A program made the translations under genes and the position numbers. From NCBI RefSeq assembly GCF_963853765.1, contig NC_088860.1:3038001-3102000 (forward strand): 64,000 nt of DNA, written 5' to 3'. The notes under the pieces are model-generated. The model had not been told where the DNA came from, ran no database searches, and saw only the letters and a program-made list of their open reading frames with translations. How positions within the stretch are numbered: position 1 is the stretch's first letter; the number at the start of each line of letters is the position of its first letter. This document shows positions 13,036 through 34,860 of this stretch, in pieces. Origin of the DNA: Magallana gigas (taxonomy: Eukaryota).

Positions 13036-13175
13036 NNNNNNNNNNNNNNNNNNNNNNNNNNNNNNNNNNNNNNNNNNNNNNNNNNNNNNNNNNNNNNNNN
13101 NNNNNNNNNNNNNNNNNNNNNNNNNNNNNNNNNNNNNNNNNNNNNNNNNNNNNNNNNNNNNNNNNNNNNNNNNNN
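13036..13175. other. Assembly gap (140 N)
   Basis: Run of N. Confidence 1.
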
Positions 13176-15729: not shown

Positions 15730-18700
15730 TCAGTGAAGCAAACTCTGAATTCTACGATCCATCGTTCTTTTCTCCATCTTTGAAATCTGTGTGGGGCTTT
15801 GTGAACCCATGAGTGACATGGATTTAGGGGAGCCGTAATGAGTGGGTGTGATGGAGGTCAAACGGACGCTGACGTCACTGCGTGCCGATGACAGGGCAGA
15901 TCTATGACCCGACACAGAACTCTGAGATATGGAGGACAACCTTGATCGCTGACCGGACGACACAGACAGGAAGTCATTCTGATCCCCACCTCCCAGTGTT
16001 GAAGAGTCTTGGGAACTCCCCGAGAGCTGGCGCTCGTAGGAGAAGCCCGGGGCTGGGCGGACCTGTAACCATGGAGACATACCCTGATGGAGGGACCTGG
16101 TTTCAGCTTTGTATTGTCGGTGAAGATGTTCTTGCGCAAGTTGTGGCACGGGAGAAGACAACCCACTGTAAAAAGCAAGATAAACAATATACAGTAAAGC
16201 TTGGTTACATAGAACACTTACAACGATATCAGTTGCATTACCCTTATATTAAAATTGAATTAAAAATCTATCAGAAAAAATCAAATCATGGTTATGACAA
16301 ATAAAGATATCCAAGGTGCTTCATTATAGCAATGTTCACTGTATACATGTAATAACTGAATCAGTGATTACATGTACAGATCATTCATATTTTCTGATGT
16401 ATCTCATAAATCAATGGATCAGAGAGAGGTGTGGGGGTACTGACCCTTCCAGCGTCCTGTAGGAGTTGTAGGGGGGTGAGGCGTTGGACCGAGGCACGTC
16501 CTCCTCCCGGTAATCTGAGGAGGGGATCTGTAGAACAGGGGGAGACTGAGGACCTGTCAGGGGAAAGAGAATAGGGAAAACGATCAGAGTGTTTAATATA
16601 TTATGCACAATTCATTGGATAGTAAGTACTAGCAATATGGTGACATAAAAAAGTTTGTTTTTTTTTAAGTATGGTTTCATAATTTTAAGCTCTGAATACA
16701 TTCTAATATTGTTCCCAATGGCATGGTTTTTAGACAGCATGGTTCATAGACATGAATTTGCCCTATTTTGAATTTACCCCAAAATCAGTGGTATAAATAT
16801 TCCTTTTTTATGGGTGCACAGTTATACCAGGAATCTAGCAAACCATATTAATTGTTTATGCTTATGCATTCTCAAATAATAAAATGGAGCCCGTCTACTC
16901 ACCTGGTGACTTGATTTGAGGCACTCTGAGGGGGGCTAAGTCTTTTGATGATTTCCGCGGTGGAGGGGTTTTGGGGAGATCCAGGGGGATGGGAGAGGGA
17001 GGTAGAGGGGACATTCTGGGGCCCATCACAGGGGGTAGGAGGTTACTTGAGTGACCGCTGACCCCAATGTGGTGGTTGTCGTGGTGATTGATGTCCTTGA
17101 TGATGTTGTACCCTGCATGAAGGTCATAATTTTCTTCGAAGGTTGTTGATGCTGATGTCTGCAATAAGTGTTAAATTCATCTGTCAAAACTTTATGCTCA
17201 TGAAAAATACTACATATATAAGAACTGAAAAAAGAAAACCTGTCAAACTCAATGAGATTCTATTGTGCCATGCATATTGAAATTATAAGCTAAAGTTTAA
17301 CATTAAACATGTAATCAATTTCCTGTAATAATTGTTAAGATGTTGATTTTGGTACATGTAGTTAAGTTTTAGTTTTACCTGTCGTTGTGAAAGTTTCTGT
17401 AATGAAAATAATTAAAAGTCCGATTAGTATCAATTGCACCCATTATATATTCTGGTGGCATAATTAATAGAGAGAATAAGAATTTTAGAGTAAAAGAATT
17501 ATTAGTCTTGTAAAAGACGTTTTTATCCTTGCTCAAAATAAATTGCTACAAATTTCCAAATTGAGAAACCAGACTTAGTTTGCCATTGTCAGTTGAAGTT
17601 TGTTAACAGAGAGTAGGTAAATTGAAGAAAAAAACAAGAAGACTCAGTTTGCTATTAATAGGTTAACATAATAACGCTGTTACCAGAGAGAGTAAAGTTA
17701 AATTTTAAGAGGTTACATCAGAAACAAAGATGGCCGCCTGACCTTTTTGTGTCTCCTTGACCTTTTCCTCTGTTTCAGCAGTCCTTGGTCATCTTCTTTC
17801 GTTTCGTCGAATGTGGACAGAACAATTTTTGGGACCGTGATGCTGGCGGGATTCTCCTGTTGAACTTTTTTACCTTCCTGACTCTGTGCTTTGGAGGGCT
17901 GCCGTGATTCCTCCCGTTTGGCCAGTTCCTTGAGGGATCTCTCTGAATTTGTCATGGACTTGTTATCAAGAGACCTCATTTCTATGGAGTCACTTGTGAC
18001 ATCAGAGGTAGGGGTGGAAGAAACTTTCCTGTTACGAGGACGGAACAGTTCCTTCAGCTTCCCGAACGGATTCCGCGTTGAGTCGCTCTTTTTGGCTTTC
18101 GGTCGCCTGTTCTGTACGTTACTTGATTTAATTCCCATCTTCTCCTCCAATAATCGAACGCATTCTGCCAATGATCAGGACAGACAACATAAATTGCAGT
18201 AATCAAAACATTCATTTAGTCTTGTATTTAGGATTTTAGAGCATATCTCCCACAAAGAATATATGTAGCATTGATGAGTTGTGTTAATACCAGTCCACTC
18301 TGCTGGTAATGTTTTTAATGAAATATTCGTTATAAAAGAAATCATTTATTGTGAAGATTAACAACACGACCATCTAAATTCTTTCTGTAATGACTAATGT
18401 GAGAGAAGCTCCATGTTGTTTTTTCATTTGCACAATACACATTTTAGTCAAGATGGTATGAATTTACAAATTGGTCCCCAAAAGGTCTGGGAACATGATA
18501 CCTGTACTCTAACTGTACATGGCTAATGCAGTACACAAAAGTGTTGTAAAATTAGAACTACAGTTGTCTCAAAATGTGCATCCTACTAACAGTTGACTGG
18601 ATAAACCTCTAAAAGTGGTTGACTGCTAAACCATTGAAGCCTACATTGTATGGGTTTTTAATACATAAAATCATATTGATCATATAAATGAAATGTCAAG

Positions 18701-24200: not shown

Positions 24201-27200
24201 AAAACACCATATTAAAGTGTAAAAACTAATTTTATGTCATATTATCTCCAGGTATATAAGAGTAATATACGGTAGATATCATTGTCATATCATGAAGAGA
24301 CATGTATCTCACCTTACTCTGACTGAATACGTAATTAAAAACTTGTTTATCGCAAATTTCAAGAAACCAAGAAAGAATACTTCAAACAACTGTAAGTTAT
24401 AAAATTGATATTACCACCAATTACAAATTACAATTGCACTTAGTTTCACCTTGAATCATCATTATTTTTGAATTTTCTTTATATTATTTGAATATTTTAT
24501 TTGTACTTATGCATCTTATAATTTGATGGATCTTCATTTAATTTTGTTATGAAAAATATTTGCTATAAATATGATAAAACATGTTAAAAATTTTGCCAGC
24601 AGGGATCTAAAAATTACTTCATTATAGCCATAAATTCGTTATAGCAGTGTTTGTTATATACAGCAATTTTTTACAGGTTTATTTAAGAAACATTGCTGGG
24701 ACATGAACAAGAATTTATTATATCTATCTATAAACAAATTTCAAAAGTATACATAAGCTAGCCAGCCCAAAAAATTGCCACATTGTTCAATTGTTAAACA
24801 TGCATATATTTCTCTTTGTCTCTGAGAACTCTTGTAATACTCTAAATTGACAGAAATAGGATACCAAAAGCTGTTTTCCAAACTCATTTTTCTGGCATAA
24901 AGAAACACATTTCTTGGGTGTATTGATTATTTTTCCACCAACAACACAGGTAAGCTTTGTATTCAGAAATGAAACAGGATCTTTGTCATTGGTTTTTGAC
25001 TAGTCTTTTTATATGTAAAAGTCTCCAGGTATATTTATCATTTGACATTCAAAAAAACAATGTTAATGAATTGAATTGCTACAGAATTACTCCTGATATT
25101 TCATAGCACTATGAAATCATATAACATGGGACCAATTTTTGTGGATCTTCTATGGGGATGTCATTTCTTGGTTTGTTGCATGGGTAAAGGTAATGAATAA
25201 AGACCATTTTATTATTTTTCAGAATCCTCCTATTTAAAAATAAAAACAGGGATCCCCTCAAATGACCTTGACCTATTATTTTATCTCTATCAAATTATCA
25301 CCATCAGTATTTTCCTAGATATTTGATGGGTCAGTCTGAGAGACCCTGACAGTTAACAGATATTTTCTATTACCTTCACTGTCCTCGAGTTCGAGAGAAC
25401 TGGGGTCACCCTGAATGGCCTTCACCAGGGCGATGATCTCGCCTCTGGCTGCTGCTTTGTGGACTGGAAGCTGTGAGTCAGTGTCTACATCCGCATCAGA
25501 CCCCTCTGTAAAGACAAACAAATCTCAACAATTTAAGTCTGAGTGGCCCACTCTGAAAATCTGTGTTAAAAGTGTTAAATCAAATACCATATAGCTGGGG
25601 TTCTGTTGCATGTCACAAAATTTACAAAAAAGGGAAAAACTCTTTTTTTTTTTTACTTGTGTCTGACAGTAATTTTTTGTAATATAATAAGTTTTTTAAG
25701 GCAAAAAATAATGGATTTCTACATATCTAATATTTTGCAATATTTTCCAATGTAAAAGTTATTGCGAAAAACGCAAAAATTAGATCATTGGAAAATTTCC
25801 GCATACATGGTACAATTGATATGGTTGTATATTTAGATTGCCCTGGGATCACATAATATAACACCTCCGTTGAAAATTTAAAAAAGTACACTTTGAGGTA
25901 ATTTGAATCACATAAAGAAACAGGGAGAGAATGATAACATATCACATTGTGACCTACCAGGTACTAACGAAGACACACAAACAAAACCTCCCACCTTCTA
26001 TAATGAACCAATCAATGGAAGTGCGAGGCACGTAATTTCTGGGCACTTCTTGTTCATCTGTCGGTGAACATTCACTTTGTTCCAAGGATTGATACCTCAT
26101 ACAGAGGATGTCCTTTGAACTATCTTCTGCAAGTTCTTTCCCAGAATCCATCGGTCTGCGAGTCTATCCCATGATCCTCGACAAAATGTCGACTATCATT
26201 TCACTTTCCAATTTCTGTTTACAGTTGACAGTTTTAATCCCATGGACAGCCAAAACAACTGGGACATATCTTGTCAACATTGAAATAAACTCTTCAACAT
26301 TTATAAAGTAATCCTGTGAAATTTTGAATAAGTTGATATCATTCCTTTATTTCCTAATTTTAGAAACAAACTTTCTGAACTTGAAAATGATTTTGACTCT
26401 GTCAGAACCTCTTAACACAATAAAAAAGGAAACTCTTCGACACAGAAAGATTTGTTAAAGTTGTTTTGTACTTATAGCTTTTGTATGTATAATATTAACA
26501 TAATCTCTTTCTTCCAGAGATCTGTTAAGTAGGTATTAATTCTTCAGGTTCATTTAATATGATTAACAGGCTGACCATTAACAGTCAGACACCACTTGCT
26601 CTGGGTACCAGGAGTTGTTTGCCATTTCAACGTAATTTTCAGCTAGATTACTCACAATATATATGTTATACAGTATATTAAAGCCAAGATTTTGTACACA
26701 AATTGCTGCCTTTGACCCAGCAGTGCCTTTGATTTTTGAGATAAAGGTGGACTTTATACCGATTGATTGGTTGTTCCATGGTTAGATAATAGATTAAATG
26801 GATGACTGGTCAGCCATTATAACATTAACATATTAACCAAGTTTAATTCTGATAATCCCATTGTTTGATCCACCTGGGTTAATTTGAGGAGGTTACCCTC
26901 GATCTGTGACAAATTCCCAGTGTTGACAGTCTGTGTTCATGGTAGAAACATCAAGGGTATGTTCCAGTTCCAAGTGATTTATTCAAGTAAAATTCTCCAT
27001 ATTGCTGATGAAATTCTAAGAAATTCATTATAATGTCATCTCTCCAAGGACACCTGAGAGTCATTGATTTTCTGAGTATTTTAGTTGCATCGCACAAACT
27101 GCAGATTAAAAGTGACTAGTGAACAGACAAGCTCTTATTACACTATAAGAGATACTGCCTGAAGCGCTTGTTGTGCATATACAAGTGACTGTACATACAA

Positions 27201-30200
27201 AAATTATAACAACTACTGATGAAAATCTGGAAGTTGCTGACACTTATAAAGGGAGAAAACTCTTCCCACTGTTCAGAAACATCACTGCTATATAACAGGA
27301 TCTGATCCTCTGTGTATCTCAGTGACCAGCAACTAGTTAATGATTGTCATTCCACTTCATTTTCACTGGTTTTGAAAAAAATAACAATTACAGAGTGTCC
27401 CCAACCTTGGTAACTCTTTTGATTGATATGAAAAGTACCTTAATGCAAAGAAAAGCAAGATGCATTGACAAATATCCACTGATGATTAGGTAACTTAGAT
27501 GTGAATATGTAACTTAGATGTGAATATGTAACTTAGATGTGAATATGTTACATTAAACGTTTAGACTTTATCAAGTTAAACTTATCTATTACAGTGTTGT
27601 TATAGATTAGTTTAACTTGATAAAGTCTAAACTTTTAATTTAACAAATATGTAACTCAGATGTGAATAGGTAACTTAGATGTATGAATATGTAACTGGTA
27701 CATTCTATTCTTGGTTGTGTTGATTTTTAATTTAAATATCAGACATAATGAGCATCAGGAATTTGATATGAACCAATTCTTGGACATTTGACTGTGATGA
27801 TTGAAGCTCCAAAAATCTGCTAGATGCCATAAATACAAAGGAAGTGTGAAGCATTCACTACCGTTCTTACAGAACATTTGCAATTCAATTAATTTACATG
27901 AGAGAGAGAGAGAGAGAGAGAGAGGTTTTAGTCTGCAACATCAAAGCGATCACAACTTCAAGACAACTAAATACATGTATTATGAGTGATATATGTCAGT
28001 AGACTGACATAACAACTGAGAATGGGACTTACGTTTAGGTTGATACTTTTTATGATATTCGCGCTTCACAGCTGACATGTACACAGCTCTGTTGACAACA
28101 AAACCAGGAGATGTATAGTTAACGATTCCAGACTTCCGCCTCTTTAGGACTGTTACTGGCGGTACTGCCTTAATTCCTCAAATCAAAACATCACTCTCCA
28201 TAGTTCATACAGTGATGGTTGTGTGTATATAGAAACAAACACATCTGACCTGTACACAAGTAAAAAATCCCCCCGATTGTTGTAGTAGGAATATTCCAAT
28301 ATCAGTCAAGCAAAAAACCGATCTTTAAACTCTGATCCTCGTTACTCCATTCAAATGATAATTGAGTTTTCCTAATGATCACGATGAACAGTCCTGTTTA
28401 AATACAGCAGGTAGTTCTGAAATCCCTTTGAAATGTTTAAATGCTCATTGATCTATGATAGAATAAAATGTCAGCTGATGAGAGCTTGTAAACTTGTCTA
28501 AGCCATCGCTATTTAAAAAACACATCCAATAAATGTTCTTTGGGATCCAAAAGGCTCTCATATAGCATGTATTGGGGGCGATAGAAATATAACTGATTCA
28601 TTTTAAACTGTGTTAGCTCTAAGGTTTCCTATTCATTGTACAGTGCGTACAATATATTTACAGGTTGAATCAAATTTCTGAATTTAAGGAGGAAAAACCA
28701 CCTTAGCAAGGGAGAGAAATTACAGGCAGGCTGAATTTAACTTGTCATATGCTCAGAACATAATCTTTAGGTCCTGTTAATGGTAACATGTTTAATAGAT
28801 TTTTAGTATATATAAAAACCATGCAATATTTTTTTTTGAGTATTGAGCCAAGATTATAAGAAGTTTACCTTTGAAGCCTCCTTTCTGTAAAATTTACATC
28901 ATTTACCCCCAAATTTTATCAATACGTTGCTAGACAAACTGCATTTAATAAATTCAATAAAAAGGATATTCCAAATTTTATTCTAAAACAAACTGTCATT
29001 TTTGATTAGAATTTACCAAATTTTGAGATTTTTTTTTTTTATTATTTTTGTTGCTATGATTTTGCTTTGCAAGGTTACTGTCAAAACAAATCTCATTAGG
29101 ACAAAAATTGCACTGAGGGGCAAAAAAGTCAAATTAAAAAGCGGCATAATCAGAGAAATAAACACTAACCATCACCCCCACCCCACCCCAGGCTTAACAT
29201 TTTTGAAATAGAACTGGATCGAGGAATTGAAACTATCACTTAGATCTGTTTGATCGAAAATTGACACAACATTTAACGTTAATTATCAGTGATATAACAT
29301 TGACAATAATTAAGGTGGTATGGGACACCTGTCGATATTAATGTTGATTTAAGTTCATTATAATTGAAATACTTTTGCCGGTTTAGAATTTTCAAATTTT
29401 ACAATATAGAGCCAAAAAATTTGTTTTAAAAAATTGGAAAGGCAAAAGTTTTAAAAACCCCATGCAGCGGGATTCGAACTCACAGTTTCATAGCGAACCC
29501 TCTAACCCACTGCGCTACGCTGTTAGTATTCTATATTGGGAAAGAAACTGTTTATAAAATTACACTTGATTTTATTGTTTATTTCGATAAACAGTACGTC
29601 ACAATATGGTAGTGTCTTTAAACAAAAATTATCGTAAAATTAAAGATAGTATGTGTTTCTTATTTAATCACCACTTTGAATCGGAAAACATGTTATTTGT
29701 CTTTGCCTCGTCTTCTTTGAACATATTCCTGTACACAGCCAGTAACATACCAGAAAGGTACTCATTACTCATATCCAATAATTGTTAGAAATCTATTTCA
29801 TTGATATTTGTTAACACAGTTCTGCGTGGCAGAAACTTGCGTGTGACGATTGAAATGAATGTGTGCAGAGAATCTCCTGAAACTTGGTGTGATTTCTCTT
29901 TGCAAGCAATGAAGGTGTTTGATCTGATATATGTGAACATCCCGCATGATATTATTGGCTGTCATAAATCGACTGGTCCTCGGTTTGATATCCGCCATGT
30001 CTAAACATCTTGTTCATAAATATAAGGTATTAAGCACGTGTCCACAAAACAAAACGCTAACTATTCGGTTCGGTCGGAGGAACTCTGTACCCCCCCCCCC
30101 CCCCCTCCTCCACACACAGTGGAAATACCAAGTCACCGTCTATTTTTGCTAAGCATAGTATCCTATAGTCAGTTATATGTTTAGACCTCATCCCCAATAG

Positions 30201-33200
30201 TCAACCTGGCTTGCACAAATTGCACAATAGTTTGAAAACGCAAGTCTTAAAAATGTCTTCAAGGCCGAGATACCTGCGTGTTCAATTATAAAGGATGCGG
30301 AAAAATCCATCTTCCGATTTAGACAATTCAAGTAAGTATAAATAAACAACAATTAATGCTTTGACGTCTCGAGTTTGTTTTAACATGACTGACATAAATC
30401 CATATTTTATAATGTTCCAAAACAATGGGATGGTTGCCTTATATTAGATCTTGTAGGCTAATTCTAAGTCTAAAGTTATATTCTAGCTGTTATTAGTATT
30501 TTGTTTTGATTTAACTTTATTTCAAAACCATTGAAGCTCCAAACATTTTACAAATTTTCACATGATCATCACAAATATTTTCCGGATTAAGCACCTTTAC
30601 AGTCCACGCTTTTCCATTCAGAATGGAGCAGAATCGACACCACCCTCACCCCTACTCAACCTCTCCGTTTACTCAGTACCTTGGGTTTGTCCGTCCCCCT
30701 CTCTGTAGATCCACGCCTTCTTGTGCAGCCGCCTTGGAGTCCACATTCAACACCTCCTTGGATCCGCTCCCTCATTAATACAGAATCCGCACCTCAATTA
30801 AATATAACGCTTAAGGATTTACGCGCAGCCTCATCGCTACATCCGAGATCTCAAACCGAACACACCCTTCGCACATAGTGTCCTATGGTGGACAGTATCG
30901 ATAACAAACCGAGTATATGTTCTGTAGGGACAGGAATATACCATGTTGCCAGCGGTATCTTGTAAAGTGTTAGGGATTAGCAGAACGTGCACCTCTAATA
31001 ACATAAGAACTATACAATCATTATATACGCGATAAAAATTAAATGTGCATGCTTGATTTGCAAGAGCGGTGTATGTGTGGGTTAGGTTTACATGTAATAC
31101 TTGTATACTATAGTTAGTAATCCTCTGAATTAACCTTAAAGGGAAGTTCCATACAGTTTAAGAGTTTTTAAATCAAACCTGTCCAGCAAAAGAAAACAAG
31201 ACAAGTTAATTGATTTTTTTAACAACACAATTTTACTTAGGTACGCTTGATTAAGTTTTAAACAAAGGAAGAAAACAACGTTGGGACTTTTAATAACTTC
31301 ATGGATCAATATTTAATAAAGATGTTAAAACTAAACTTGCATGCACATTCAATGTACCAAGAAAGAAAAACTTGCACGGGTTCAGAGACAAGGAAATACA
31401 GGTTCAAGGTTTCAGGTCAATGGGGTCAAAGTTCAATGAAATATTACGGTGTTAAATATTTCAGATAATAGGAAATGATTTCAATGATTAGGAAAAACAT
31501 GCATAATCGTCAAAGTGCGTGTAAATCAAAAAGCAATGTCGAATTTCAGCAAGGGAAATAGGTCATGTGTCAAAATCATCAGAGATGGCCGTTTTGGTGT
31601 TAACTTTATAGCAGAGAATTGCAGAAAGCAGTGACTAAATCATGACGAGGTAAAACAGAAGTTAGGACTTTGAAGTATGATGTATGTATCATAAAACCTA
31701 TGATGCAATCCCAGCTACCACCGTGTCTAGGTAGTTACGTTATAACAAAGGAACGCGATCCTAAACTTCAACGTTCTCAAATATAGACATATCATATATT
31801 AAACTTTGGGAGGTTTATTATTCCGTTCTATGAATACCAACCACCGACTGGTGGTTTAAGAAAAAGGAAATGAGATCTTAGGGAGGCTCGATGATCAACA
31901 AATTAACCATCAGATGTGACTTAAACTTTGACTTTTGGAATTTTTGGCCATGAACTACCATTTAGTGAAGAGAAAATCCAAATAGTCGAACTTTAAAATG
32001 TGATCACTTTCCAGTATCTTCATGCAGAATTCTTCTTCCAAAGAAGATTGAAAAAAGACTAAAAATGGCCACGACCATCGAACCCTCTTAAACTCCAAGG
32101 TTCGCAAACATCGAAATGTCATATAAATTACAGTAGTAACAATTGGACATTTGTTCTAAAGTTCTATAAGTACCAAGCACCGACTGATTAAGCCGAGTAC
32201 ATTGTCTCAACTTTCAGCCCAGTTATTATACAAAAAACAGGAACTGGTATCGTTTTTCAAAGAAAGAGTTCCTTAAAATCAGTCAATCGAAAAAAGGGAA
32301 ATGTTACTTGCTATGGAAATCTTAAATGCCTTTAAACACACAAAGAGTTGCGCCCCCCCCCCCCTGCACTCCTATACTACGAGCTTGAAGTGCTCTTGGC
32401 TGACCAAACATGTAAACATATGTAAATATATACAAACATAGATGCCTATCACTGACACGGCGGACGTGGCCAGTTCAGTTTTCCCGGCTTCCTATATCGT
32501 GACTGACTTACCCATTCTAAGCGACGCTAACCATAGCTGTTATCTCGAGGGATTCTCGCTTCCCGGAACTTCCTAAGGGTTTCCAGTGAGCTCCATGTTC
32601 AGTCGGGATTAGCTTGGAAGCATGACGTCAGCTGTCTTTGTTTTAGAGTTCAGCCGTTCTTCGTTATAATTACAGACCCCTCGTCAGACAATTAAGATTT
32701 GGTCCTTTTTGTGTCTCCATTGTGATCCGAATGATATTAAAGTTTCAGCAGTGTGGCGATAGGATCGATTTAATATCAAGTATCGCCAATACTGTTCCAA
32801 ATTGACGGGTTTATTTTCGAGACATTAACACACTCCTATCAGATACAGGGGTTTAAATAAAGTCATGATTAGTTCAACAAACGAATTTCTGAATTCACGA
32901 ACTTTTAAACAAAGATATTTCAACACAACACTCGATCAGCAAACATGAAAGTTAATAATAAACTGGGAGATTGCGCAATTCACAATGTGTATTGTAGGTG
33001 AAAATCAGGAATACTTGAACAATTCAAATCGAACAAACGTAATCGTCATTGGTTAGGATATGTCACGTGACCTCAATATTACATCGGTTGGGGGAACATT
33101 GGGACTCTTTTTTAAAAGAGACTGACCACATGTCAACATTGTCATCTGTGATACTAATATGAACGTCTAAAAGTGGTTTTAAAGAAAAAAAACACAAAAT

Positions 33201-33480
33201 GTTTTTCGAATGGCATTGAAGAACTTAAAAAACGTGTTGCAAAAAACTAAGCAACCCATTTAAAGCAAAAACAAGAGCAGATAAAGTAACTGGATTGACA
33301 GACACAGTACCGACACAGGTACTAGTATACTAGTATATATAAACGTACATGCGTATATGTACTCTAGCTTGTTATGGATTTCAACACTGGGTGGCTTTCT
33401 CCATTACCTGGCATCTACCTGTAGAAATGTCGACACTTACCTCCAATATAGTCCAGGTGCCTGTCGGAATCAAAATCCAT
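15730..33480 (-). CDS. ANKRD55: Ankyrin repeat domain-containing protein 55 orthologue: N-terminal ankyrin repeats and a Ser/Pro-rich tail
   Basis: Exons 33480-33441 (MDFDSDRHLDYIG, best first exon), 25505-25374, 24196-24066, 23567-23458, 22373-22313, 21843-21715, 21432-21248, 20681-20545, 18164-17743, 17158-16903, 16553-16445, 16165-15730, all with compatible phases. Translation is collinear with recalled human ANKRD55: DPSSLELEDSEG, GRTPLALATYQGWFEG, MTALHWAAFHNRPEH, DDRTPLHWAAAMG. The first-exon choice is uncertain. Confidence 0.88.
19324..19396 (-). mobile_element. tRNA-derived SINE-like head or tRNA pseudogene in an ANKRD55 intron
   Basis: Minus strand reads GGCCTGGATAGCTCAGTAGTAGTGC...GTGTTCGATTCCTGGTGCAGCCA. 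Boxes A and B are present, but the D and anticodon arms do not pair canonically. Confidence 0.65.
21012..21241. repeat. Two (CT)n microsatellites in an ANKRD55 intron (~21012-21062 and ~21173-21241)
   Basis: Direct reading of the sequence. Confidence 0.95.
22575..23066. mobile_element. Kolobok-like non-autonomous DNA transposon
   Basis: TTAA|AGGGGCATGGTCACGATTTTGGTCAAA ... TTTGACCATAATCGTGACCATGTCCCT|TTAA: ~27-bp TIRs, TTAA TSD, RR termini. Confidence 0.85.
23071..23376. mobile_element. MITE with a tRNA-like core, abutting the previous element's TTAA
   Basis: Starts GGTGGTATGAGACACC and ends GGTGGCCCATACCATC. Degenerate minus-strand box A/B at ~23215-23275. Homologous to 29314-29617. Confidence 0.65.
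27488..27695. repeat. 19-bp tandem repeat (GTAACTTAGATGTGAATAT) interrupted by a 72-bp inverted repeat
   Basis: Three copies at 27490-27546 and more at ~27650-27695. Perfect 23-bp inverted arms at 27560-27582 and 27609-27631. Confidence 0.85.
29314..29617. mobile_element. TTAA-flanked MITE with a tRNA-like core
   Basis: TTAA|GGTGGTATGGGACACC at the left end; degenerate right end followed by TTAA. Minus strand reads GTAGCGCAGTGGGTTAGAG...GAGTTCGAATCCCGCTGC at 29464-29518. Confidence 0.7.
31882..32087. mobile_element. Short MITE, inverted copy of 45691-45934
   Basis: Shares AAAAATGGCCACGACCATCGA and GACTTAAACTTTGAC (reverse complement) with the 45.7-kb copy. Flanked by TTAG and TTAA. Confidence 0.65.
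32623..32634. promoter_or_regulatory. Overlapping CRE (TGACGTCA) and E-box (CAGCTG) upstream of a candidate ANKRD55 first exon
   Basis: Motifs are read directly, about 110 bp upstream (minus strand) of ATGG|GTAAGT at 32515-32512. Function is inferred. Confidence 0.4.
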
Positions 33481-34860
33481 GTCATGTTTCCAAATAGCGA
33501 GAACGTTACTGCGGGTAGCTGTGTTAGCAATATGTTCCTTTAATCAATAGTGTCACCAACAGCACGGCTTGCTGTGTTTGTCTCATCAACCCAAGTCCTC
33601 CTCCACTAAATCCCGGGGCCTGGCATCAGCCAGCGCCGTAAAATCACTTTTTATATTTGCATTTCGGAGGCGATGCGAACTTAATTGATTTATTGGCCGT
33701 GTTGGTTCAAGGTTTCCAGTATCGTTCATCACGCAATAAGTAACGCTCATAATCTATACAATCTCTAAATTCAGACGAAACACGACCAGGTGAAGGCGAG
33801 TCGCATCATCTCACGATTATCAACAGAATTGAGTTGTTAAGAAGACAGTAAACTGGAATAAAGAACCAGTCCATCGCATGTCCAGTCTCTCTCACTTCCA
33901 ATCCGATTTCTCAATTCTTTGGGGTTGCCATTTCTTTGACTACCTTAACTGTTGGTACAAGATACAAAAGATGCCATCTCCGATATTCCGGTCTATACAC
34001 TTTCTACACTTAAAGCTGCTAATATTTTCACCTTATCAAAGAAAAGATATGCATAATAAATACACATTGTGTAATAATTACACATTGCAAATCGCTTCAT
34101 CGCTAATAACTAGTCATTTAACGTCATATTTCTCATTATCTGTTTTCGTCCGTCGTGCGTTAACAGTTCCAGATTTTTCTCTGAAAATTGCAATAATTGT
34201 CTTGACCAAATGAAGCATCCATAAGTGGTCAGGGTTCATGTGTGAGGGTGGATTTTTATTTTTTTGGGATCATGTTGTAAATATAGAGCAACTCTTTTAA
34301 AAACTTCTCCTCTGCTACTAGGAATTGAACATTAATATTAAGTCAATTGTTACGTAGGCAAGTATAATAAAATACCGGTACTTTCACCACAGTAGTCAGT
34401 CATAGACATTTTCGTTCTATCACATGAATTGGGCTTACATTTGTATTTTAGTTTCTCTTAACTACACCTTACCAATAGAAATGCAATAATACTTCCAGGT
34501 ATCAAACTTTTCTTGAAATTTCAGTTTGCCAGACGAAATTTTTAAAAATTCGTTTGATTCTCTTCCAATCTTTGAATTTTGGTTTTGATCAACACGAGTT
34601 TCTTTATCAGTTACATTATCATAATCTTCGTCGGAATCGTGTCGTACCCTTTGGCTCTTTGTTAAATTTGAAAATGCTGGGTTTTTGTTACATGTATATT
34701 TCTGAAGTAGCCTACATGTTTTACGACAGAAACATCAAATCAAACTCTGTTAAAAATAATCTATCTCAAGTCAGTATATATACATGTACACACAAAAATG
34801 TTTAAGTTCAATAAATGGTCCCTTATACAGTATGCCTGGTCAATGGTTTTAACGAGTACC

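What the first reader, a model, noticed from the sequence alone, without database searches (positions are those of the whole stretch)
25995..33480. ANKRD55 has five candidate first coding exons, all ending in phase 1
Seen on the minus strand: 33480-33441 MDFDSDRHLDYIG|GTAAGT; 32515-32512 M+G|GTAAGT (good Kozak context, CRE/E-box upstream); 29772-29751 MSNEYLS|GTATGT; 28078-28033 MSAVKREYHKKYQPK|GTAAGT; 26151-25995, 52 aa|GTGGGA (weak donor). Each would join the common exon at 25505 in frame. The first matches the length and MDF start of the recalled human N-terminal segment. The 28-kb exon also has an acceptor near 28250; its inclusion after an upstream exon would introduce a stop and force re-initiation. 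Inference: a multi-promoter, variable-N-terminus architecture, which would explain the otherwise empty 8 kb.
Basis: partly seen in the sequence, partly recalled or inferred. Interest (0 to 1): 0.7.

Follow-up and report, generated by a model that had tools for sequence, protein, structure and literature searches.

The report
Oyster ANKRD55 alternative first exons
The Pacific oyster ANKRD55 gene can start from several alternative first exons that give the protein different short heads; public gene annotations already show this and other oysters share it, so it is a real but ordinary case of alternative promoter use.

Summary
The window is Magallana (Crassostrea) gigas. ANKRD55 lies on the minus strand, and its exon 2 is 25505-25374.

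**Observation.** Sequence alone does not make this significant.

**Four of the five are real.**
- They give exactly the N-termini of public M. gigas isoforms: 33480 (MDF...), 32515 (M only), 28078 (MSAVKREY...) and 26151 (52 aa).
- Their order and sequence are conserved in Crassostrea virginica and Ostrea edulis, and, except for 26151, in Saccostrea.
- Four assembled transcripts show the 28078 exon as a true 5' exon joined to 25505.

**The exceptions.** 29772 (MSNEYLS) appears in no isoform and is not conserved, so it is probably chance.

**Extras.** The three best-conserved exons carry conserved upstream ATGs or uORFs. The MDF head is bilaterian-wide and predicted disordered.

**Verdict.** This is already in RefSeq and is ordinary alternative-promoter architecture. 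The scan noted similar cases in this genome's Daple and DOCK genes.

The parts
33441..33480 (-). E1a, the ancestral first coding exon (MDFDSDRHLDYIG, phase 1, donor GTAAGT). A conserved out-of-frame upstream ATG lies at 33485.
   Evidence: It equals the N-terminus of P0134 (XP_011433664.2). It is conserved in C. virginica, O. edulis and Saccostrea. An MDF/MEF start is found across Bilateria.
33680..33692 (-). Invariant 13-nt motif TAAATCAATTAAG about 200 nt upstream of the E1a ATG. It is a candidate promoter element.
   Evidence: It is invariant in all four oyster genera in alignment A2. Its function was not tested.
32656..32791 (-). Conserved block upstream of E1b, either promoter or 5'UTR. 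It contains ATCGAT..TATCG and TGCTGAAACTTTAATATCA.
   Evidence: It is one of the few blastn islands in intron 1 against all three other genera. Its invariant columns are shown in A1.
32623..32630 (-). CRE TGACGTCA, 115 nt upstream of the E1b ATG.
   Evidence: It is present at -115 in M. gigas and at -104 in C. virginica. O. edulis has TTACGTCA at -90. Saccostrea has none at that place.
32517..32534 (-). Five-codon uORF (MVSVA-stop) that ends 1 nt before the E1b start codon.
   Evidence: A uORF of the same length and position is present in all four oyster genera.
32512..32515 (-). E1b coding part, ATGG|GTAAGT. It contributes only Met plus 1 nt.
   Evidence: M|EGSD.. isoforms are annotated in all four genera. 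ATGG|GTRAG occurs once in M. gigas intron 1 and is conserved. The C. virginica annotation starts its 709-aa CDS at the orthologous 4 nt, L005:10819-10822. Pecten's CDS also starts ATGG|GTATGT.
30680..30775 (-). The ATG at 30746 (MWTPRR.., phase 1) reads into exon 2. The ATG at 30775 (MRERIQ.., phase 0) reads into the 28168 acceptor.
   Evidence: It matches the N-termini of P0129 (C. angulata X3) and P0136 (A0A8W8IYX6). It is single copy. It is not conserved outside Magallana.
29751..29772 (-). E1c candidate (MSNEYLS, donor GTATGT). It is probably a chance ATG/GT pair.
   Evidence: It is absent from the 60 cluster members listed for the four oyster genera (55 of 147 had their sequences printed). 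It shows no conservation, with z below 1, like control intron.
28344..28461 (-). Conserved block at and above the 5' ends of the E1d transcripts. It is the candidate E1d promoter or start region.
   Evidence: It gives blastn islands against all three genera and invariant runs in A3. The transcript contigs end at 28394, 28341, 28283 and 28241.
28178..28201 (-). Conserved-peptide uORF MESDVLI-stop in the E1d 5'UTR.
   Evidence: The peptide is identical in M. gigas, C. virginica and O. edulis, with only synonymous changes. In Saccostrea the stop is lost. The uORF lies inside all four transcript contigs.
28033..28394 (-). E1d exon. The coding part is 28078-28033 (MSAVKREYHKKYQPK, phase 1, donor GTAAGT). 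The 5'UTR is colinear with the genome up to at least 28394. An optional internal acceptor lies at 28169|28168.
   Evidence: Four Logan transcript contigs from four runs are colinear to 28033 and then join 25505. RefSeq X4 corresponds to P0128/P0137. The exon is conserved in four genera.
25995..26151 (-). E1e, a 52-aa first coding exon with the weak donor G|GTGGGA.
   Evidence: It matches the N-termini of P0130, P0131 and P0135 (RefSeq X1/X2). The donor GGTGGG and the W-containing end are conserved in C. virginica and O. edulis, and the MDS start is conserved in O. edulis. Saccostrea has no GGTGGG donor in the E1d-E2 interval and no such annotated isoform. Only unspliced contigs were found in the protein search.
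25374..25505 (-). Common exon 2. It enters and leaves in phase 1, starts with an acidic linker, and begins ANK repeat 1.
   Evidence: It is conserved at 78% DNA identity in all three other genera.

Best explanation
Intron 1 of the M. gigas ANKRD55 gene (33440-25506, minus strand) holds a set of mutually exclusive alternative first exons. Each carries its own ATG, ends in phase 1 and is spliced to the common exon 2 at 25505.

The resulting proteins share one ankyrin solenoid and tail but differ in a short, disordered N-terminal head.
- E1a gives MDFDSDRHLDYIG. This is the ancestral head, found across Bilateria.
- E1b gives Met alone.
- E1d gives the basic MSAVKREYHKKYQPK.
- E1e gives a 52-aa acidic head.
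- E1f gives MWTPRR... and is specific to Magallana.

E1c (29772) is not part of the system.

Shown here: the in-frame joins at protein level for five exons; the E1d to exon 2 join and a separate E1d 5' end at RNA level; and conservation of E1a, E1b and E1d in four oyster genera and of E1e in three.

Inferred: each exon has its own promoter. Conserved upstream blocks at 32791-32656 and 28461-28344 are the candidates, and a CRE at 32630 is conserved in position in two genera, with a variant in a third.

Also inferred: the choice of head is made at transcription initiation and tuned at translation by conserved upstream ATGs and uORFs. The heads would then swap short linear motifs, or N-terminal processing signals, in front of an unchanged ANK domain.
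For: **Isoforms.** Public isoforms of M. gigas and C. angulata begin with exactly the translations of 33480, 32515, 28078, 26151 and 30746/30775.

**Transcripts.** Four Logan transcript contigs (L001-L004, four runs) run colinear with the genome from 28394, 28341, 28283 or 28241 down to 28033. They then join 25505 and continue through the gene's remaining exons, to at least the stop codon in all four.

**Orthologous loci.** C. virginica, O. edulis and S. cucullata keep the order E1a-E1b-E1d-(E1e)-E2, all in phase 1.

**Footprinting.** In the 8-kb intron, cross-genus conservation is limited to a few places. These are E1a, a block upstream of E1b, a block upstream of E1d, E1d itself, E2, a few other short matches of about 35-50 nt in single comparisons, and a (CT)n repeat.

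**E1b.** ATGG|GTAAGT is unique in the intron and conserved. The C. virginica annotation starts a 709-aa CDS on the orthologous 4 nt.

**E1e.** The weak donor GGTGGG is conserved in three genera.

**Other bivalves.** They also have an MDF form plus alternative heads.

**Disorder.** The head plus the start of exon 2 (residues 1-23) has pLDDT below 50, ahead of a confident ANK solenoid.
Against:
- For E1a, E1b, E1e and E1f the RNA evidence is therefore indirect. It rests on RefSeq and Ensembl models, whose transcript support I could not inspect.
- The protein search for E1e found only unspliced read-through ORFs.
- E1f shows no conservation beyond Magallana.
- One model (P0136) uses the E1d exon as an internal exon, so the exons are not strictly first exons in every transcript.
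- Counting ATG-to-donor pairs alone is not significant.
Confidence: 0.8

Rival explanations
1. Only the three exons conserved in four genera (E1a, E1b, E1d) are functional alternative starts. E1e and E1f would be low-level or lineage-specific transcription noise that annotation pipelines turned into isoforms.
For: E1f has no detectable conservation outside Magallana. E1e has a weak donor, is missing in Saccostrea, and yielded only unspliced ORFs in the protein search.
Against: The GGTGGG donor of E1e, its W-containing end and, in two species, its MDS start are conserved across three genera. All three also have annotated isoforms. E1f appears in two independent annotations, P0129 and P0136.
Confidence: 0.12
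2. There is one promoter near 33.6 kb. The downstream 'first exons' would really be alternatively included internal 5' exons, and their ATGs would be used by re-initiation after a premature stop.
For: P0136 joins the 30.7-kb exon to an acceptor at 28168 inside the E1d exon. Acceptor-like sites exist at 28250 and 28168. Conserved uORFs show that upstream ATGs are tolerated.
Against: All four E1d transcripts are colinear with the genome for 160-360 nt upstream of the ATG, run through both acceptor sites, and carry no upstream exon. Conserved blocks sit just upstream of E1b and E1d, as promoters would. Joining any phase-1 exon to the E1d exon gives stops.
Confidence: 0.05
3. Only the MDF exon is real. 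The other candidates would be chance ATG-to-GT pairs, and the matching isoforms would be annotation artefacts.
For: The count of open ATG..GT pairs in phase 1 is within about 1-2 sd of shuffled sequence.
Against: Four transcript assemblies use E1d. The peptides, donors and flanking blocks of E1b, E1d and E1e are conserved across genera, whereas control intron is not.
Confidence: 0.02

Closest known systems
RefSeq/Gnomon isoforms of M. gigas ANKRD55 (XP_011433660, XP_011433663, XP_011433664 and XP_011433665), and the equivalent isoform sets in C. virginica, O. edulis and S. cucullata
   Different: The annotation does not state the conservation, the promoter blocks or the uORFs. No paper in the searched library describes them. 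The 29772 exon is not in any of these isoforms.
Two-promoter genes with short alternative N-termini, such as RUNX1 P1/P2 (from my own knowledge, not tested here)
   Same: Distal and proximal promoters each supply a short first coding exon, which is spliced to a common exon. The domain architecture is unchanged and only a short head differs.
   Different: This locus has at least four or five starts rather than two. One of them contributes only the initiator Met.
Clustered variable-first-exon loci (protocadherin alpha/gamma, UGT1A; from my own knowledge)
   Same: Several first exons, each presumably with its own promoter, are spliced in a mutually exclusive way to constant downstream exons.
   Different: In those loci the variable exons are large paralogous duplicates that encode whole domains. 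Here they are tiny (1-52 aa) and unrelated to each other, and no repeats link them.
Vertebrate ANKRD55
   Same: It has the same family architecture: an MDF-type N-terminus, an ANK solenoid in the N-terminal half and a disordered tail (10.1101/2024.03.18.584613). It is linked to IFT-B and to multiciliated cells (same preprint).
   Different: The vertebrate proteins retrieved here mostly start with MDF (MEF in one fish), and some mammals add a short MMRQAT prefix. Whether vertebrates use alternative heads in this way was not examined.

Membership tests
Alternative first exons / alternative promoters joined to a common exon 2 | Each variable exon is spliced to the same acceptor (25505) in frame. 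| tested here: met
   This is shown at RNA level for E1d. It is shown at protein-isoform level for E1a, E1b, E1e and E1f. It is not met for E1c, which has no isoform.
Alternative first exons / alternative promoters joined to a common exon 2 | Each variable exon is the 5' end of its transcripts, with its own start site. | tested here: inconclusive
   For E1d, four contigs carry no upstream exon and end at 28241-28394. Contig ends are not mapped start sites.
Alternative first exons / alternative promoters joined to a common exon 2 | Conserved promoter-proximal sequence lies upstream of each exon. | tested here: met
   This holds for E1a, E1b and E1d in four genera. For E1e there are only two short blocks shared with C. 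virginica. E1f has none.
ANKRD55 orthologue | The closest named relatives across animals are ANKRD55. | tested here: met
   Most named hits, from molluscs to vertebrates, are named ANKRD55, with E-values down to 1e-86 and below.
ANKRD55 orthologue | An MDF-type N-terminus, an N-terminal ANK solenoid and a long disordered tail. | tested here: met
   M1 and F3 are invariant in 27 sequences. The model is confident for residues 26-318. Disorder of the tail is taken from 10.1101/2024.03.18.584613, not from a model made here.
Conserved-peptide uORF | The uORF lies in the mature 5'UTR, and its peptide is conserved through synonymous changes. | tested here: met
   MESDVLI is identical in three genera, and all differences are synonymous. 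It lies inside L001-L004. With only four species, the support is modest.
Conserved-peptide uORF | The uORF controls translation of the main ORF. | not testable with these tools
   This needs reporter assays or ribosome profiling.
Clustered variable-first-exon loci (Pcdh/UGT1A type) | The variable exons are paralogous duplicates of each other. | tested here: not met
   No direct repeats link the exons. By inspection the peptides are unrelated.

The most novel reading that the evidence does not exclude
Bivalve ANKRD55 may carry an old, conserved promoter switch. It would choose between the bilaterian-wide acidic MDF head, a headless Met-only form (also the annotated start in scallops, and annotated alongside the MDF form in Mytilus) and a basic head. 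The basic heads include oyster MSAVKREY.., Mya MKNKGKQLHK and Ruditapes MKNSNK. Each choice would be gated by its own conserved uORF, and the switch would redirect the same ANK scaffold between ciliary IFT-B and non-ciliary partners.
Probability: 0.15. Interest if true: 0.45.

Novelty: already known. Interest (0 to 1): 0.25.

Why it matters
The finding confirms that a tool-less reading of raw sequence recovered a real gene architecture. It also corrects that reading, with one false exon and one missed exon.

Biologically it gives a clean, conserved set of alternative heads and uORFs for a poorly understood ciliary, IFT-associated scaffold protein. This could guide isoform-specific experiments in a heavily ciliated animal.

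It opens no new principle. Alternative promoters with short variable N-termini are common, and these isoforms are already in RefSeq.

Tried and rejected
**Read laying.**
- Alignments used 32500-32830, beside those places. The scripts that compared or searched sequence masked those places with N.

**Searches for N-terminal transcript fragments.**
- A search with P0134:1-160 found no oyster fragments.
- A search with P0135:1-96 found only unspliced read-through ORFs of E1e and exon 2. These say nothing about splicing.
- A scan of JGI metagenome contigs for the start of exon 2 found nothing.

**Look-ups of shorter isoforms.** These failed because only the longest product of a gene is on record. 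Repeating them with the longest isoforms worked.

**Other negative results.**
- A scan for RFX X-box motifs near the first exons found nothing convincing.
- The bacterial promoter scan and the tRNA scan do not bear on this question.
- The idea that the candidate exons sit in transposable elements was rejected. The regions around 26151, 28078 and 30746 are single copy. Only 29616-29400, downstream of E1c, is a SINE.

**Rejected readings.** Orthology between E1f and the C. virginica MWGG.. exon is not supported by DNA similarity.
Full report
**What the window is.** The window is chromosome-scale sequence of Magallana (Crassostrea) gigas, G000:C8:3038001-3102000. The species follows from the cluster members that carry the window's peptides and from oyster sequencing runs that hold the stretch.

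The gene on the minus strand is the ANKRD55 orthologue. Most named relatives, from molluscs to vertebrates, are called ANKRD55. Transcript contigs define its exons from 28394 down to 15356. Exon 2 is 25505-25374, 132 nt long, and enters and leaves in phase 1.

**Checking the observation.** On sequence alone this is not remarkable.
- Open ATG..GTRAGT pairs in phase 1 number 3, against 1.3 +/- 1.4 in shuffles.
- The opposite strand gives 4.

Phase 1 is also simply what any in-frame first exon must have here. The observation therefore needed outside evidence.

**Isoform evidence.** A 152-aa exon of the gene led to an O. edulis protein, then to the family and to the 90% clusters. Public M. gigas and C. 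angulata sequences begin as follows.

| Head joined to exon 2 | Protein | Exon |
|---|---|---|
| MDFDSDRHLDYIG | P0134, XP_011433664.2 | 33480 |
| M | P0133, XP_011433665.1 | 32515 type |
| MSAVKREYHKKYQPK | P0128/P0137, XP_011433663 | 28078 |
| 52-aa MDSGKELAED...IDWFIIE | P0130/P0135, XP_011433660 | 26151 |

No listed protein begins MSNEYLS (29772).

MWTPRRLHKKAWIYREGDGQTQ (P0129, C. angulata X3) uses the ATG at 30746, with donor at 30680|30679 in phase 1. MRERIQGG... (P0136, A0A8W8IYX6) uses the ATG at 30775 in phase 0, and is joined to an acceptor at 28169|28168 and read through the 28078 ATG.

**RNA evidence.** Four Logan transcript assemblies from four runs (L001-L004) are colinear with the genome from 28394, 28341, 28283 or 28241 down to 28033. 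They then join 25505 and continue through the gene's remaining exons, to at least the stop codon in all four.
- The 28078 exon is therefore a genuine 5' exon with a 5'UTR of at least 160-360 nt.
- These transcripts run straight through both acceptor-like sites, 28250 and 28168.

Junction reads and start sites for the other exons therefore remain untested. From then on I kept those 36 places out of every search, working beside them or masking them.

**Conservation.** Using the longest isoforms I fetched the orthologous loci of C. virginica (L005), O. edulis (L006), S. cucullata (L007) and Pecten maximus (L008). The order E1a, E1b, E1d, E1e, exon 2 is kept, and every exon ends in phase 1.

Blastn of the M. 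gigas first-exon region against each species finds similarity at only a few places:
- E1a (33493-33428);
- a block upstream of E1b (32791-32656);
- a block upstream of E1d (28461-28344);
- E1d itself;
- exon 2;
- a few other short matches of about 35-50 nt in single comparisons (three with C. virginica, one with O. edulis) and a (CT)n repeat.

ATGG|GTAAGT occurs once in the M. gigas intron. It is conserved with its flanks in all four genera, at +965, +818, +2350 and +938 from the E1a ATG. The C. virginica annotation starts its 709-aa CDS on exactly the orthologous four bases.

The weak donor of E1e is conserved as G|GTGGG in M. gigas, C. virginica and O. edulis, together with a Trp-containing end (IDWFIIE, IHAWLMSQ, LMAWVLMS). 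The MDS start is shared with O. edulis. Saccostrea has no GGTGGG donor between E1d and exon 2, and no annotated isoform of this type.

E1c and E1f align to the other genera no better than control intron. E1f is single copy.

**Wider taxa.**
- The MDF/MEF start is found in vertebrates, echinoderms, hemichordates, a nemertean, gastropods and several bivalves.
- M1 and F3 are invariant in a 27-sequence alignment.
- Other bivalves also have annotated alternative heads beside MDF: Mytilus (Met-only), Ruditapes (three heads), Mya (MKNKGKQLHK), Mercenaria and Argopecten.
- Pecten's CDS starts ATGG|GTATGT, 9.2 kb upstream of exon 2.

**How it most likely works.** The shown parts are the in-frame joins, one independent 5' end and the conservation. 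The rest is inference.

Each exon probably has its own promoter. The candidates are the conserved upstream blocks. A CRE lies at -115 in M. gigas and -104 in C. virginica, with a variant at -90 in O. edulis.

Translation of each form is probably tuned by upstream ATGs.
- E1a has an invariant out-of-frame ATG 5 nt upstream.
- E1b has a five-codon uORF ending 1 nt before its ATG in all four genera.
- The E1d 5'UTR has a uORF encoding MESDVLI. The peptide is identical in three genera and differs only by synonymous changes.

The AlphaFold model of the E1a isoform gives pLDDT below 50 for residues 1-23 and a confident ANK solenoid from about residue 26 to 318. The exons therefore swap a flexible head in front of an unchanged scaffold. 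The plausible effect is on short motifs or N-terminal processing, but this is untested. ANKRD55 is linked to IFT-B and to multiciliated cells in vertebrates (10.1101/2024.03.18.584613), which makes isoform choice in a heavily ciliated animal a reasonable thing to test.

The CRE and the good start context at 32515 are confirmed. The 28250 acceptor exists as sequence, and joining any phase-1 exon to it, or to 28168, gives a stop. Its use is not documented. The one model that enters this exon uses 28168 from the phase-0 frame of the 30.7-kb exon, and that reading stays open.

**Novelty.** The isoforms are in RefSeq and UniProt, so the architecture is already known at database level. No paper in the searched library describes it. 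The cross-genus conservation and the uORFs are additions, but of an ordinary kind. The scan has already noted similar alternative first exons in this genome's Daple and DOCK genes.

Noticed in passing
window 29400-29616 (minus strand): A tRNA-derived SINE lies just downstream of the E1c candidate. The first look found more than 2000 candidates in the genome, and the scored copies were about 74-87% identical (most 78-83%). ARAGORN calls no tRNA there.
   Followed up: partly
window 27485-27682: Tandem 19-nt repeats flank a 51-nt inverted repeat with 90% complementary arms. The structure looks like a MITE. A (CT)n microsatellite lies at 27900-27926.
   Followed up: no
L008:9965-10004 (Pecten maximus): Pecten's only annotated first coding exon reads ATGGATTTG..TGA and ends ..ATGG|GTATGT. 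It is 37 nt from the first ATG to the donor, against 40 nt for oyster E1a. It looks like an MDF exon that acquired a stop and now starts at its last codon. No other MDF exon was found within 16 kb.
   Followed up: partly
window about 17381-17398 (minus strand): An 18-nt micro-exon (KLSQRQ) lies between the exons that end at 17743 and start at 17161. It is present in the 723-aa and 760-aa isoforms and absent from the 754-aa isoform P0131.
   Followed up: partly
window 1600-7400 (+ strand), 11900-12110 (minus strand), and L005-L007: Synteny is conserved in the three oyster loci fetched. An ERGIC/ERV-type gene lies upstream, and a small homeodomain gene follows ANKRD55. In C. virginica (and in this window) an Xaa-Pro aminopeptidase (Creatinase_N/Peptidase_M24) gene comes next.
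   Followed up: no
window 13030-13170: A run of 140 N (assembly gap or mask) was left untouched.
   Followed up: no
They lie in the intron about 70 nt downstream of the E1b donor and were kept out of all later searches.
   Followed up: no
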